This document shows positions 25,992 to 52,444 of a DNA stretch of 64,000 bases, piece after piece; position 1 is the first letter of the stretch; each line of letters starts with the position of its first letter. The DNA lies in assembly GCF_001194135.2 (NCBI RefSeq), contig NC_068994.1, positions 37,934,164 through 37,998,163 on the forward strand, written 5' to 3'. The notes beneath the pieces were generated by a model. The model did not search any database. It had not been told where the DNA came from and was given only the letters and a program-made list of their open reading frames with translations. The DNA is from Octopus bimaculoides (taxonomy: Eukaryota). Position numbers and translations under genes: made by a program.

Positions 25992-26242
25992 TTATGGCAC
26001 ATTTGGTATTGCTGGTAGAGGTTTGTTTGTGGAAGAAAAGCTATTTTTCAATGGTAGCTGTTGAAATGTACTGTCTGGGGAAAACGATTTTAATTTTGTA
26101 TTTTCATCAGTGTTAGTATCTACATTATTGTCTGGTAATTTAGGGCATGGCATGGTCCCTGTATTATTATTCCTTGGAAGGGTACTGTCTGCTTTTGGTG
26201 TTTCTTCTTCTGGGTGAGTTTCTTGTCTCCTAAGGTAAGGAT
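25992..26242 (-). CDS. PCDH: Protocadherin terminal coding exon 3 (251 nt incl. TAA): (D)PYLRRQETHPEEETPK...NKPLPAIPNVP*
   Basis: Long pyrimidine tract ending ttcttattctgcag|AT; G+AT completes an Asp codon in phase 1 with exon 2; open to TAA at 25992-25994; non-repetitive, low-complexity tail-like composition. Confidence 0.82.
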
Positions 26243-26828
26243 CTGCAGAATAAGAAACAGAAAAAAGAACTAAGAAAAACACTTGAAATGTGAAGCTTAC
26301 AAGAAAATAATGATTTTAGCTAGTTTATTACAGATCGAAGTAATTAGTCTAAAGCTCTTTCTTCCACCCATTCTGTCCTCTCTTTTCTCACTCCCTTATA
26401 CAATTTTCTCAAAGAAAATTGACAACACACTTAAGCACATTTCTACTCAGGTGTGGCTGTGTGATTTAGAAGTTCACCTTGCAATCATATAGTTTTGGGT
26501 ATAGATCCACTGCATGGCATCTTGGACAAGAGACTTCTATAATAGCAGGCCTCAAGCCATCCAAAGACTTTTGAGTGGATTTAGTAACTGATGCTAAAAG
26601 AAGCTTATTGTATGCATGTATGTGTGTCTGTTTGAGAAGCGTGCTCATGCTTGTTTAGATTTCTGTTTCTTCAAAAATCACTGAACTATGTATGAGCTGT
26701 GATGTTGTCATTTTTCCTATCAATAAACTGTCTGCTGGCTTTGTACCTTTGAGGCTATGTGGAACATGGGTTTTCTTTATATAGAAGAACTGATATATTC
26801 TGCAAATGAATATTTTTTAACTACATAC
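26243..26828 (-). other. Predicted 586-nt GT-AG intron between cytoplasmic exons 2 and 3
   Basis: GTATGT donor and ctgcag acceptor, both phase 1; contains a family-B SINE fragment. Confidence 0.8.
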
Positions 26829-26994
26829 CTGGTAATTCCTCATAATGTGTAGTGTATCCTTCACTGTATCCACGGCCACTGTCTGCATAGGATATCGTTG
26901 ATAAATCACTATAGCAATAGGGTGACGTAAACTTTGTTTCTTTGTCTCCAGCAGTATCAGGGCTCGTGGTGGTTCTTTGAATGTTTATTTTAGG
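26829..26994 (-). CDS. PCDH: Protocadherin cytoplasmic exon 2 (166 nt): PKINIQRTTTSPDTAGDKETKFTSPYCYSDLSTISYADSGRGYSEGYTTHYEELP
   Basis: Acceptor tttgtcttttcag|CCT in phase 0 matches the large-exon donor; donor CCAG|GTATGT in phase 1. DSGRGYSE resembles the DSGxGxS(D/E) CM1-type motif of delta-protocadherin tails. Confidence 0.85.
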
Positions 26995-27084
26995 CTGAAA
27001 AGACAAAGGAACAGCTATAAGCAATAGTGGAAAATAAGATGATACTGAAATGCTGTGTTATAATTTATTATAATATAGTATCTA

Positions 27085-27301
27085 AAGCAGCGAGCTGGCA
27101 GAAACGTTAGCATGCTAGGCAAAATGCTTAGTAGTATTTCGTCTGTCTTTACGTTCTGAGTTCAAATTCCGCCGAGGTCAACTTTGCCTTTCATCCTTTC
27201 AGGGTCAATAAATTAAGTACCAGTTGCATACTGAGGTCGATCTAATCAACTGGCCCCTACTCAAAAATTTCGGGCCTTGTGCCTAGAGTAGAAACGATTA
27301 C
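27085..27301 (+). mobile_element. Well-preserved family-A SINE with a 13-bp target-site duplication
   Basis: aatatagtatcta at 27072-27084 and 27302-27314; intact B-box-like gagttcaaattcc. Confidence 0.88.
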
Positions 27302-49204: not shown

Positions 49205-49325
49205 TTCATCAACACTGCTCAACTGGTACTTCTTTTATCAACCCCCGGAAGGATGAACAGCAAAGTTGACAATGGTGGCATTTAATGTCAGAATGTAAAG
49301 AGCCAGAATAAATGCCATTCAATAT
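49205..49325 (-). mobile_element. Family-A SINE fragment
   Basis: caactggtacttcttttatcaacccccggaaggatgaacagcaaagttgac. Confidence 0.65.
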
Positions 49326-49654
49326 TTTTGTCTGATATACCAACGAATCTGCAAGCTTGATACATTTATGATAACGACGTTTGTCAATCCATGAAATGAA
49401 CAGAGAAAGCAGAAAGCACAGTGCAATTTAAAGCTAAAATCAAAAGCATACATGCAAACAGGTGAGGTACTTTGATGCTGAAAAGTTATTTCAAACAACA
49501 CCTTAGCTCTAAATTCTCACACCAATCTGGAAGCAATATCAAAAATTCTAGAAGTTGCAGAAATTCAAGAAGATATAACATGTAACAAAAGAAGAAATAG
49601 AAAAACAATATAAAGAGTGGAAAAATATTTTCACCAATGTATAGCAATGAGTGT

Positions 49655-50100
49655 TCTAGGCATGGCTGGCGTGATTAAGAAGCTCACTTTGGAACCATCT
49701 GGTTTTTAGTTCAGTCCAGCTTGCATGACGTCTTGGACAGGTGTCTTCTACCACAGTCCTGAGCCAACCAATGCCTTGAATGTGAATTTGGTAGATGGCA
49801 ACCCTGTGGAAGCTCAGTGTGTGTGTGTGAGAATGTGTGTGTGTGTGTGTGTGAGAAAGAGAGAGTGTTTGTGTGTGTGTGTTTGTCACCTGACCACTGC
49901 CACAAGACAACCCCACTTCAAAGTGGTGTTGGTTGTTTATGCCCCCATAATCTTTGTAGTTTGGCAAAAGCGACTGATAAGATTAAAGACCAGAGTTAAA
50001 AAGCACATAAGTACTAAGGTCAATTTGTTTGACTAAAACCTTTCAGTATAACTGCTGCCCAATGACTGAAACAAACAAAAGATAAAGGATAGAAAAGTTA
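49655..50100 (+). mobile_element. SINE family B whose tail abuts the protocadherin large-exon donor
   Basis: Head ggcatggctggcgtgattaagaagc through tail aatgactgaaacaaacaaaagataaaggatag. Confidence 0.8.
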
Positions 50101-50113
50101 ATTAATGACTTAC

Positions 50114-52444
50114 TCTGCCTTCTTTTAGAGTATGGTAATGTATTCCTGGATCACTCCAGTTATGATCTGACTGAAATCCAGGTAGAGACTGCCTTCTGCA
50201 CATAACAGGCATTGTAACTGGTGTATCCGAGTGAGGTAGTTGTTTATGGAAATATTCTATATGTTTGTTTGTATGGGGGTATTTCCTTGGTGAGCTCATC
50301 ACTGTACTGTAATGAATGTTCCTTTGATCATTCCTTTTCACTATGCACAATGTTATTGAGATGACAAGAACAAGAGATACTATCACAGCTGCCACAATAA
50401 TTATAATAAATAGATTTATATTAATGCTATTGTCTGGTATTTTTGATGCTGCTGTAAATGTTGTTAATGTTTTATTGCTAACAGTTAGTTTCAATTTCAG
50501 TGTAGTTGTTGCTGATAAAACTGGTTTGCCTTTGTCTTTGACTGCTAATTTTAGATCATATGATCCAGCATCATTTTGGTTAACTGTGTGAGCAAAAGAC
50601 AAAACTCCTGTATATGGGTTAACTTTAAATAACTTTTTAGCATTGCCTCCAAGTATTTCATACTTAAGGAAAGCATTTACATGGCTGTCTCTGTCAGAAG
50701 CTCTTAGAGTGGTGATTTCCTTGCTACTGCCTGGATAATAGTTGAACTCCACATTGAACAGATTTCTACTGGGGAAGGTAAAATAGGGAGCATTATCATT
50801 TACATCAACAATTTCAACAGTGATATTTGCTGTGCTTGTCAGTGAAGGAGTTCCATTGTCTTTTGCTAAAACTTTGAATCGATAAATGTCACACTGTTCT
50901 CTGTCTAGTGATTGGGTGGTTGATATAAATCCAAAATTAGAAATATGGAAAGGAAAGTTTCTATTTGTTTCACTTTTAAGAGAATAACTAACTTCTCCGC
51001 CAGGCCCTGAATCAGGATCACTAACATTAACAAAGCCAATAGGAAAGCCTTTCTCTCCATTTTCATATGTTATAAATGTAAATGAACTCTTGGTAAACTG
51101 TGGTGGTACATCATTAACATCTACGATATGAACAGAAAATTTCTTTTCTGCAGATAAAGGGGGAGATCCTTTATCTTGACATGTAATCTTAAAACTCATA
51201 CTTGTTGTTGACTCCCTGTCAACTTCCTTTTTCAGTTTTAATGTGTATCTGTTTTCGTCTACATCTTTTAAATAAAAATAATCATGTTTTACACCACAAT
51301 GAACATCACCATTTTTCCCCTTATCATTATCACTAATTTTTACATATGCAAGGAAGCTATCCACCGGTATATTTTCTGAAATCGTTAATGTATTGTTTGA
51401 TTGAGTAATAAAGTTAACTTCAATATGAGGTGCATTGTTCTCTTGATTAGTCACAAATACCCAAACTATTGCATCCGAACTCAAAGCAGGGCTACCTCCA
51501 TCAGTGGCCTCAATATAAAGCTGGTAGCTTTTTTGTTTCATTTTAGAAATTTGTGTATTGAGGAAGATTTCTCCAGACTCTTCATTTAATTTAAAATGTG
51601 ATACAGCAGCTTTTAATGTTTTTGAGCTGAACCGATATGAAATTTTACTATTCATACCAGAATCAGCATCTGTTGCAGAAACAGCTGCTATTGGCATGTT
51701 ACTTCGCACTGTGTTTCCTATGGAAAAATTGTACTTTTTCTGCATGAAGACAGGAGGATTATCGTTGAAATCTAAAACATCAATTTTGATTTTTAAGATA
51801 CTTTCTTCTTCTGAAGATCTACTACCTTTGGCAATGACTTGGATCATATGTGTATTTTTAGTTTCCCGATCAAGTTGTTCATCTAACACTATTTTTAGTT
51901 GAGATGTTCCATCCACTTTCTTAGAAATATCTAAGGAAAATGGTGCATCATCACCTTTATTTATTTCATACTTGATTTCAGAGTTTTGTATGCTTATATC
52001 TTTATCCATAGCATTGATGATAGGTTTTTTCATACCTTTACCATCAGCTTCAGAAAAATGAAGGTTCACTTCAGACTTTGGAAATATGGGTTTATTGTCA
52101 TCAATATCATTTATAATTATCTTAATTTCTCTGACATATTTTACAGTGCCATCACTTTTTATTGTAACATCAAGTGTTCTGTAACATTCTGCATTGTAAG
52201 AACAAAGAGCTTCTGCATCTAGTTTTTGAAGTGTATATACTTTTCCACTCTTGGTGACACGGAATAAATTTTTGCTTTTTCCCTGAAGCATTTCAAAAAC
52301 TATATTAGATTTGTCTTGCTGGGGAAGACTGTCTGCAATATCCCCTACAAATGTTCCTGGAGGTTCTTCTTCATTTACATAGTAGCTTTCCATACAATTT
52401 GATTGTCTTAGGAGAAACAAGAATATACAAACTTGTAACCACAT
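50114..52444 (-). CDS. PCDH: Protocadherin large coding exon: signal peptide, EC1-EC6, TM helix, proximal cytoplasmic tail (777 codons)
   Basis: Open frame with cadherin motifs (DIDDN, LDRE, DFNDN, ATDGG, DVND, DVNDN), EC1 C-X5-C (CSYNAEC) typical of protocadherins, TM INLFIIIIVAAVIVSLVLVISITLCIV. The ORF-track start at 52474 is TTG; the first in-frame ATG (MWLQVCIFLFLL, signal-like) is at 52444. Donor AGA|GTAAGT at 50114/50113, phase 0. Symbol is family level only. Confidence 0.96.

What the first reader, a model, noticed from the sequence alone, without database searches (positions are those of the whole stretch)
25992..50114. Protocadherin tail completed by two small exons 23 kb away, a variable/constant-like layout
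The ORF track shows a single-exon-looking protocadherin. Two unannotated segments have canonical splice sites whose phases (0, then 1) chain exactly to the large exon and extend the tail by ~138 aa. One giant ectodomain+TM exon followed by distant small cytoplasmic exons is how vertebrate clustered protocadherins attach shared constant exons. Whether these two exons are also used by other ectodomain exons upstream of this window is unknown; if so, it would be a constant-exon system in a cephalopod cluster.
Basis: partly seen in the sequence, partly recalled or inferred. Interest (0 to 1): 0.75.

Follow-up and report, generated by a model that had tools for sequence, protein, structure and literature searches.

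The report
Ordinary three-exon octopus protocadherin gene
The two small distant exons really do complete this Octopus bimaculoides protocadherin, but the three-exon gene is already in public annotation and the tail exons belong to this gene alone, so it is not a vertebrate-style shared "constant exon" system.

Summary
On the minus strand, 52444-50114, 26994-26829 and 26242-25992 join through GT-AG introns (phases 0 and 1) into a 915-aa protocadherin. This is exactly RefSeq XP_014789593.1 ("protocadherin beta-13", O. bimaculoides), so it is not unannotated.

O. sinensis, O. vulgaris and Argonauta hians have 1:1 orthologues. They use the same three coding exons, junction positions and phases, in gap-free assemblies. 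Against Argonauta, exon 2 is 88.6% identical at DNA level while its flanks are about 50% identical. It shows 15 synonymous versus 2 non-synonymous codon changes.

The three assembly gaps are all inside intron 1. Their flanks are collinear with the gap-free relatives.

The constant-exon idea is not supported. The window holds no other protocadherin exon. An exhaustive HMMER search found this tail only in the orthologue cluster. Paralogues carry homologous tails only 25-37% identical, encoded by their own exons. Published work (PMC9068888) states that cephalopods diversify protocadherins by whole-gene duplication, not shared final exons. No RNA reads could be examined here.

Verdict: already known, low interest.

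The parts
50114..52444 (-). Coding exon 1 (2331 nt, 777 codons). It encodes the signal peptide, six cadherin repeats, the transmembrane segment (residues 677-702) and 75 aa of juxtamembrane cytoplasm. It ends in phase 0 before the donor GTAAGT.
   Evidence: Pfam finds six Cadherin stretches plus Cadherin_2. It is 100% identical to residues 1-777 of XP_014789593.1.
26995..50113 (-). Intron 1: 23,119 bp, GT...AG, phase 0. It holds interspersed repeats, microsatellites and three assembly gaps.
   Evidence: The orthologous introns measure 17,347 bp (Argonauta), 34,398 bp (O. vulgaris) and 38,210 bp (O. sinensis), all in gap-free assemblies. The intron is collinear with those loci. No protocadherin-like coding sequence lies inside it.
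26829..26994 (-). Coding exon 2 (166 nt, 55 codons plus 1 base). It encodes PKINIQ...HYEELP. It is the most conserved part of the protein.
   Evidence: Against Argonauta it is 88.6% identical at DNA level versus 50-52% in the 150-nt flanks, with 15 synonymous and 2 non-synonymous codon changes. At protein level, 53 of 55 residues are identical.
26243..26828 (-). Intron 2: 586 bp, GTATGT...CAG, phase 1.
   Evidence: The position and phase are the same in Argonauta (1506 bp), O. sinensis (855 bp) and O. vulgaris (399 bp).
25992..26242 (-). Coding exon 3 (251 nt, including the stop TAA at 25994-25992). It encodes DPYLRRQE...LPLKNSFSSTNKPLPAIPNVP.
   Evidence: Both ends are conserved in Argonauta and the middle is variable. 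The C-terminal motif LPxKNSF[ST]SxxKPLPA[IV]P is shared with paralogues.
37693..37905 (.). Assembly gap (213 N) inside intron 1, next to an (AC)n microsatellite.
   Evidence: The flanking alignments are collinear with O. vulgaris and O. sinensis and lie 55-56 bp apart there.
40612..40762 (.). Assembly gap (151 N) inside intron 1.
   Evidence: The flanks are collinear with the relatives, and the missing stretch is 139-140 bp there.
41935..41944 (.). Assembly gap (10 N) inside intron 1, next to an (AT)n run.
   Evidence: A single alignment to O. vulgaris and to O. sinensis spans it.

Best explanation
This is an ordinary, already annotated Octopus bimaculoides protocadherin gene. It is RefSeq XP_014789593.1, on chromosome CM046614.1 of assembly GCA_001194135.2, and has three coding exons.

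One large exon encodes the signal peptide, six cadherin repeats, the transmembrane helix and 75 juxtamembrane residues. Ordinary cis-splicing across a 23.1-kb phase-0 intron and a 586-bp phase-1 intron adds a 138-aa cytoplasmic tail from two small exons. Those exons are private to this gene.

The layout of a big exon followed by small cytoplasmic exons is the standard gene structure of the octopod protocadherin family. The whole unit was copied by gene duplication, so every paralogue has its own diverged copies of the tail exons.

Shown here: the exon structure, its conservation in four octopod species, purifying selection on the tail, and private tail exons in paralogues.

Inferred: the tail is a docking region for intracellular partners. 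It carries a conserved HYEELP motif, which resembles the pYEEI-type SH2 ligand. It also carries a C-terminal KPLPAIP, which fits the class I SH3 ligand pattern [RK]xxPxxP. That reading comes from general knowledge of these consensus motifs and was not tested.
For: - Identity with RefSeq: the product matches the 915-aa RefSeq protein exactly, and the window matches the assembly.
- Orthologues: O. sinensis, O. vulgaris and Argonauta hians have the same three coding exons, splice sites and phases in gap-free assemblies.
- Conservation against Argonauta: the exons are islands of conservation. Exon 2 has 15 synonymous versus 2 non-synonymous codon changes.
- Identity by region against Argonauta: ectodomain 72%, juxtamembrane 91%, exon 2 96%.
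- Private tails in a distant paralogue: XP protocadherin beta-2 (P0004) has its own exon 2, with the same phases, 74 kb from its large exon.
- Private tails in a tight array: in a tandem array in Argonauta, each 3.5-4.3-kb gene has its own physically separate copy of the tail exon.
- Tail divergence: paralogue tails share motifs but are only 25-37% identical.
- Tail uniqueness: an exhaustive HMMER search found this tail only in the orthologue cluster.
- Window content: the window has no other protocadherin coding sequence.
- Literature: whole-gene duplication without shared final exons (PMC9068888); tandem duplication on one chromosome (PMC9795677).
Against: No transcript or junction reads for this gene could be examined, so splicing of exon 1 to exon 2 rests on comparative evidence and on the RefSeq model.

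The chromosome could be inspected only to 11.5 kb upstream of the ATG (the window edge). A distant upstream donor cannot be formally excluded.

The proposed docking function of the tail motifs is inference only. Pfam finds no family in the tail.
Confidence: 0.93

Rival explanations
1. Constant-exon system. Exons 2-3 would be shared final exons that other large ectodomain exons, upstream of the window, also splice into, as in the vertebrate Pcdh alpha and gamma clusters.
For: The formal layout matches a vertebrate variable exon: ectodomain, transmembrane segment and a short cytoplasmic stretch in one exon, then small cytoplasmic exons after a long intron. The gene lies on the protocadherin-rich chromosome, the same 60.6-Mb record as P0004, P0009, P0018 and P0023. 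Only 11.5 kb upstream could be inspected.
Against: - No other ectodomain exon lies in the window, and no other called gene lies within 10 kb of the gene in any of the four species.
- No protein among 1.84 billion representatives joins this tail to another ectodomain.
- RefSeq gives this gene a single product with no isoform tag.
- Where octopus protocadherin genes do have RefSeq isoforms, these stay at least 90% identical and differ in length at the tail, not in the ectodomain.
- Every paralogue examined has its own tail exons.
- PMC9068888 states explicitly that cephalopods do not use shared final exons.
Confidence: 0.03
2. Prediction artefact. Exons 2-3 would be real conserved coding exons that are not joined to this large exon in vivo. 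They might belong to a separate transcript, or the large exon might end by read-through (…EGR-VSH-stop).
For: No RNA evidence was available here. Read-through of the donor would add only 3 codons before a stop, so a tail-less isoform is possible. Stand-alone tail-only gene models exist in databases for paralogues, for example P0124 at 162 aa.
Against: - Order, orientation, junction positions and phase compatibility are conserved in four species, although the intron varies from 17 to 38 kb.
- The same tail motifs follow each large exon within about 1 kb in compact paralogues.
- A 3.2-kb Logan contig (SRR6517992) carries an uninterrupted 1001-aa ORF that runs from the cadherin repeats into an exon-2-like sequence. 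This looks like a spliced family member, but the species and library type are not known.
- Independent annotations in O. sinensis and O. vulgaris give the same 915-aa product.
Confidence: 0.04

Closest known systems
RefSeq XP_014789593.1 'protocadherin beta-13' (O. bimaculoides), with orthologues XP_029645602.1 (O. sinensis), CAI9732419.1 (O. vulgaris) and the Argonauta hians 892-aa protein
   Same: It is the same gene. The O. bimaculoides protein is identical over all 915 aa, and the orthologues have the same three coding exons.
   Different: Nothing differs. The earlier 2015 UniProt model A0A0L8FI69 is a truncated 669-aa version without the tail. The name 'beta-13' is a best-hit label, not orthology with vertebrate Pcdh-beta. 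The literature describes independent expansions in the two lineages.
Vertebrate clustered protocadherin alpha/gamma loci (variable exons plus three shared constant exons)
   Same: One large exon encodes six cadherin repeats, the transmembrane segment and the start of the cytoplasmic domain. Small downstream exons complete the cytoplasmic tail.
   Different: Here the small exons are private to one gene and there are two of them, not three. Paralogues carry their own diverged copies. The tail matches no Pfam family, including the vertebrate constant-region family. Diversity arises by whole-gene duplication (PMC9068888).
Vertebrate non-clustered (delta) protocadherin genes such as PCDH19 or PCDH10 (from my own knowledge of their gene structure, not tested here)
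   Same: They have a large exon for the ectodomain and transmembrane segment, followed by a few private small cytoplasmic exons across long introns. This is the layout seen here, which suggests it is the ordinary protocadherin gene plan.
   Different: The octopod tails lack the CM1/CM2/CM3 motifs of delta-protocadherins (PMC6339937) and have their own motifs instead.
Octopod tandem-array protocadherins (for example Argonauta hians P0076, P0085 and P0103)
   Same: They have the same exon plan and a homologous tail exon after a phase-0 junction.
   Different: Those genes are compact (3.5-4.3 kb, intron 1 about 1 kb) and packed head to tail at roughly 7-9 kb spacing. This gene stands alone, with no neighbour within 10 kb, has a 23-kb intron, and has 1:1 orthologues across octopods.

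Membership tests
Protocadherin (cadherin superfamily) | Signal peptide, six tandem cadherin repeats, a single transmembrane helix and a cytoplasmic tail without the classical catenin-binding domain | tested here: met
   Pfam finds Cadherin in six stretches (E 9.5e-77) plus Cadherin_2 at the N-terminus, and no cadherin cytoplasmic family. The hydrophobic segment is residues 677-702.
Octopod protocadherin family (whole-gene duplicates) | A large exon ending in phase 0, then a private small exon 2 ending in phase 1, then one or more terminal exons | tested here: met
   The same plan is seen in this gene, in its four-species orthologues, in P0004 and in Argonauta array genes.
Octopod protocadherin family (whole-gene duplicates) | Family-specific tail motifs ([FY]S[DE][LM]ST...SG[RH]...HYEE[LM]P and LPx[KR]NSF[ST]SxxKPLPA[IV]P) | tested here: met
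   Alignment of 16 tails.
Octopod protocadherin family (whole-gene duplicates) | Location on the protocadherin-rich chromosome | tested here: met
   The gene is on the same 60,576,134-bp record (CM046614.1) as P0004, P0009, P0018 and P0023. PMC9068888 places 149 of 168 genes on one chromosome. I did not verify that CM046614.1 is the chromosome the paper calls chromosome 14.
Variable/constant-exon protocadherin cluster (vertebrate alpha/gamma type) | Several tandem large variable exons upstream of one set of small exons | tested here: not met
   There is only one large exon in the 64-kb window, with none in the 11.5 kb upstream or the 26 kb downstream. There are no neighbouring genes within 10 kb in four species. 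Regions further upstream could not be read.
Variable/constant-exon protocadherin cluster (vertebrate alpha/gamma type) | An identical C-terminal sequence shared by proteins with different ectodomains | tested here: not met
   The tail was found only in the orthologue cluster. Paralogue tails are 25-37% identical. Near-identical tails in the Argonauta array come from separate exon copies.
Variable/constant-exon protocadherin cluster (vertebrate alpha/gamma type) | Homology of the tail to the vertebrate constant region | tested here: not met
   No Pfam family matches the 138-aa tail at E up to 1.
Variable/constant-exon protocadherin cluster (vertebrate alpha/gamma type) | Transcript evidence that many donors use one acceptor | not testable with these tools
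   No RNA-seq or cDNA of O. bimaculoides was available. Word-index searches with the tail found nothing, not even the gene's own protein.

The most novel reading that the evidence does not exclude
Besides their use by this gene, exons 2-3 are occasionally spliced to large protocadherin exons that lie more than 11.5 kb upstream, outside the window. That would be a rudimentary constant-exon arrangement in an octopus.
Probability: 0.02. Interest if true: 0.8.

Novelty: already known. Interest (0 to 1): 0.08.

Why it matters
A shared-constant-exon system in a cephalopod would have been a striking second origin of the vertebrate mechanism for protocadherin diversity. The evidence points the other way. 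This is a normally structured, already annotated gene, and it fits the published picture that cephalopods diversify protocadherins by duplicating whole genes, tail exons included.

Two minor points remain useful. The tail, especially exon 2, is more conserved than the ectodomain. The gaps in this assembly do not disturb the gene model.

Tried and rejected
- Word-index protein searches with the 138-aa tail and with the 213-aa cytoplasmic domain returned nothing. They did not even return the gene's own RefSeq protein. I treat this as a tool limitation, not as evidence. I replaced them with a local BLAST against the 120 retrieved homologues and an exhaustive HMMER search.
- I looked for pairs of homologues with identical tails but different ectodomains. 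Two leads came up and both were rejected as constant exons.
  - Argonauta P0076, P0085 and P0103 share an identical 59-62-aa C-terminus. They are separate, non-overlapping compact genes, each with its own copy of the exon.
  - P0013/P0014 and P0015/P0021 share a long identical stretch. It lies inside the large exon (EC5/EC6, transmembrane segment and juxtamembrane region), which points to concerted evolution rather than shared exons.
- Pfam on the tail found no family.
- tRNA and Rfam scans of the window found nothing.
- Albertin et al. 2015 (PMC4795812) is not held. I used the 2022 paper from the same group instead.
- Transcript evidence for this gene itself was not obtainable. One Logan contig of a family member gives only indirect support.
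Full report
**What is in the sequence**

On the minus strand a 777-codon open reading frame runs from the ATG at 52444 to 50114 and is followed directly by GTAAGT. It encodes a hydrophobic signal peptide, six cadherin repeats (Pfam Cadherin, six stretches, E 9.5e-77, plus Cadherin_2), a transmembrane segment at residues 677-702, and 75 juxtamembrane residues.

- At 26994 a polypyrimidine tract and CAG precede a 166-nt open segment that ends at 26829 before GTATGT.
- At 26242 another polypyrimidine tract and CAG precede a 251-nt segment that ends in TAA at 25992.
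- The phases are 0 and then 1, and the two small segments add 138 aa.

**Identity of the locus**

The window is Octopus bimaculoides assembly GCA_001194135.2, chromosome record CM046614.1. Locus L001 is identical to window 62444-15992.

The spliced product equals RefSeq XP_014789593.1, "protocadherin beta-13", 915 aa, over its full length. The annotated coding span of 26,453 bp is exactly 52444-25992. So the two small exons are not unannotated. An older UniProt model, A0A0L8FI69, is a truncated 669-aa version without the tail.

**The assembly gaps, tested first**

The three gaps (37693-37905, 40612-40762, 41935-41944) all lie inside intron 1, so they cannot change a reading frame. The open question is whether the scaffold is correctly joined and whether a coding exon is hidden in a gap.

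The orthologous loci of O. sinensis (L004) and O. vulgaris (L005) contain no N at all, and they align collinearly with the window through the whole intron.

- The 10-N gap is spanned by a single alignment.
- The 151-N gap corresponds to 139-140 bp in the relatives.
- The 213-N gap lies beside an (AC)n microsatellite, and its flanking alignments are 55-56 bp apart in the relatives.

The four orthologous proteins align across both exon junctions with no missing residues, so no coding exon is concealed. A fourth gap (25846-25946) lies 46 nt after the stop codon. Its flanks abut in both relatives.

**Are the small exons real coding exons of this gene?**

O. sinensis (XP_029645602.1), O. vulgaris (CAI9732419.1) and Argonauta hians (892 aa) all have 1:1 orthologues. 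Each has the same three coding exons, junction positions, donor and acceptor sequences and phases. Splicing the three pieces reproduces each annotated protein exactly.

| Species | Intron 1 (bp) | Intron 2 (bp) |
|---|---|---|
| Argonauta hians | 17,347 | 1,506 |
| O. bimaculoides | 23,119 | 586 |
| O. vulgaris | 34,398 | 399 |
| O. sinensis | 38,210 | 855 |

Between O. bimaculoides and Argonauta, the only strong collinear DNA matches in the locus are the three exons. Exon 2 is 88.6% identical, while the 150 nt on either side are 50-52% identical. Random intron pairs average 47%. Within exon 2, 15 codons differ synonymously and 2 non-synonymously.

At protein level against Argonauta, identity by region is as follows:

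| Region | Identity |
|---|---|
| Ectodomain | 72% |
| Juxtamembrane | 91% |
| Exon 2 | 96% |
| Exon 3 | 55% (both ends conserved, middle variable) |

This is strong evidence for purifying selection in the stated frame. I had no RNA reads for this gene, so the physical junction rests on comparative evidence and on three independent annotations.

A 3.2-kb Logan contig from SRR6517992 carries an uninterrupted 1001-aa reading frame that runs from the cadherin repeats into an exon-2-like sequence. This is what a spliced mRNA of a family member would look like, but the species and library type are unknown to me.

**Is it a constant-exon system?**

I tested this in five ways.

1. Window content. Searching all 120 retrieved homologues against the window finds exactly three places, the three exons. 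There is no second ectodomain exon and no second tail copy. No other gene is called within 10 kb in any of the four species.

2. Tail uniqueness. An exhaustive HMMER search with the tail against 1.84 billion representative proteins gives only the orthologue cluster (E 1e-49) and three weak hits. One weak hit is a stand-alone model of a paralogue's tail. No protein joins this tail to a different ectodomain.

3. Paralogue tails. They share motifs, [FY]S[DE][LM]ST...SG[RH]...HYEE[LM]P in exon 2 and LPx[KR]NSF[ST]SxxKPLPA[IV]P at the C-terminus. Yet they are only 25-37% identical to this one.

4. Paralogue genomic loci. O. bimaculoides "protocadherin beta-2" lies 5 Mb away on the same chromosome. 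It has its own exon 2, with the same phases, 74 kb from its large exon, and no other cadherin exon in between. In a tight Argonauta array, genes of 3.5-4.3 kb follow each other head to tail. Each has its own physically separate, nearly identical copy of the tail exon about 1 kb after its large exon.

5. Isoforms. RefSeq gives this gene one product. Where octopus protocadherin genes do have isoforms, they fall in one 90%-identity cluster and differ in length (1162/1161/1153/1126 aa; 857/851/807/797 aa). That is variation in the tail, not in the ectodomain.

The literature agrees. Albertin et al. 2022 state that cephalopods, unlike vertebrates, do not generate protocadherin diversity by splicing multiple first exons to shared final exons, and that diversity arose by full gene duplications (PMC9068888). 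A second genome paper attributes the expansion to tandem duplication on one chromosome (PMC9795677).

**How it most likely works**

This is an ordinary gene. One pre-mRNA is cis-spliced across a long phase-0 intron and a short phase-1 intron.

The large exon provides the adhesive ectodomain and the membrane anchor. The two small exons provide most of the cytoplasmic domain.

The tail is under stronger constraint than the ectodomain and has no Pfam family. It carries HYEELP, which resembles the pYEEI-type SH2 ligand of Src-family kinases. It ends in KPLPAIP, which fits the class I SH3 ligand pattern [RK]xxPxxP. I therefore infer, from general knowledge of these consensus motifs and without a test, that it is a docking region for signalling or adaptor proteins.

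The plan of one large exon plus small private cytoplasmic exons is also that of vertebrate non-clustered protocadherins (my own knowledge). It is therefore probably the ancestral plan. Vertebrate alpha/gamma clusters would derive from it by multiplying only the first exon, and octopods by multiplying the whole gene.

**Verdict**

The gene model is correct but already public. The variable/constant interpretation is not supported. The finding is already known and of low interest. The residual chance that distant upstream exons also use acceptor 26994 is about 2%, and only RNA junction data can close it.

Noticed in passing
window 59742-60082, 35855-36268, 28958-29198, 24100-24486: An interspersed repeat of about 240-410 bp (SINE-like) has four copies in the window, in both orientations. 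Each of the orthologous O. vulgaris and O. sinensis loci has 10-15 copies. Such insertions probably account for part of the intron-length differences between species (23 kb versus 34-38 kb).
   Followed up: partly
not in the window: proteins P0013 (O. bimaculoides), P0014 (O. vulgaris), P0015 and P0021 (Argonauta hians), alignment A1: Two paralogue types differ in EC1-EC4. From about EC5/EC6 through the transmembrane segment and juxtamembrane region (all inside the large exon) they are identical within a lineage and carry lineage-specific substitutions. This looks like concerted evolution or gene conversion of the 3' part of the large exon. PMC9068888 also suggests gene conversion.
   Followed up: no
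window 25846-25946: A 101-N assembly gap lies 46 nt after the stop codon, in the presumed 3' UTR. Its flanks abut, or overlap by a few bases, in the gap-free O. vulgaris and O. sinensis loci. The gap is therefore probably spurious or very small.
   Followed up: yes
window about 52544-52570, minus strand: A strong 3'-splice-site-like sequence (ctcttttttt ctgcttgtgt ttttcag|att) lies about 100 nt upstream of the ATG. This suggests the large exon is not the first exon and that a non-coding 5' exon lies further upstream. Conservation with Argonauta starts only 42 nt upstream of the ATG.
   Followed up: no
window 31878-31953 (intron 1): A 76-bp block is 78% identical to a collinear position in intron 1 of the Argonauta orthologue (L002 26203-26280). 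It could be a conserved intronic element or a shared repeat.
   Followed up: no
RefSeq isoform sets of other octopus protocadherin genes (clusters of P0018 and P0014): The isoforms of one gene stay at least 90% identical and differ in length (1162/1161/1153/1126 aa; 857/851/807/797 aa). Alternative splicing in these genes therefore seems to vary the cytoplasmic tail on a fixed ectodomain, the reverse of the vertebrate cluster logic.
   Followed up: partly
window 4780-5899 and 37470-38148: The long ORFs listed in several frames on both strands at these places are artefacts. They arise from runs of N and from TA/TG or AC microsatellites, not from genes.
   Followed up: yes
UniProt A0A0L8FI69 (P0123): The original 2015 model of this gene stops at 669 aa and has a 14-residue C-terminus that does not match. 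It lacks the transmembrane segment and the tail.
   Followed up: yes
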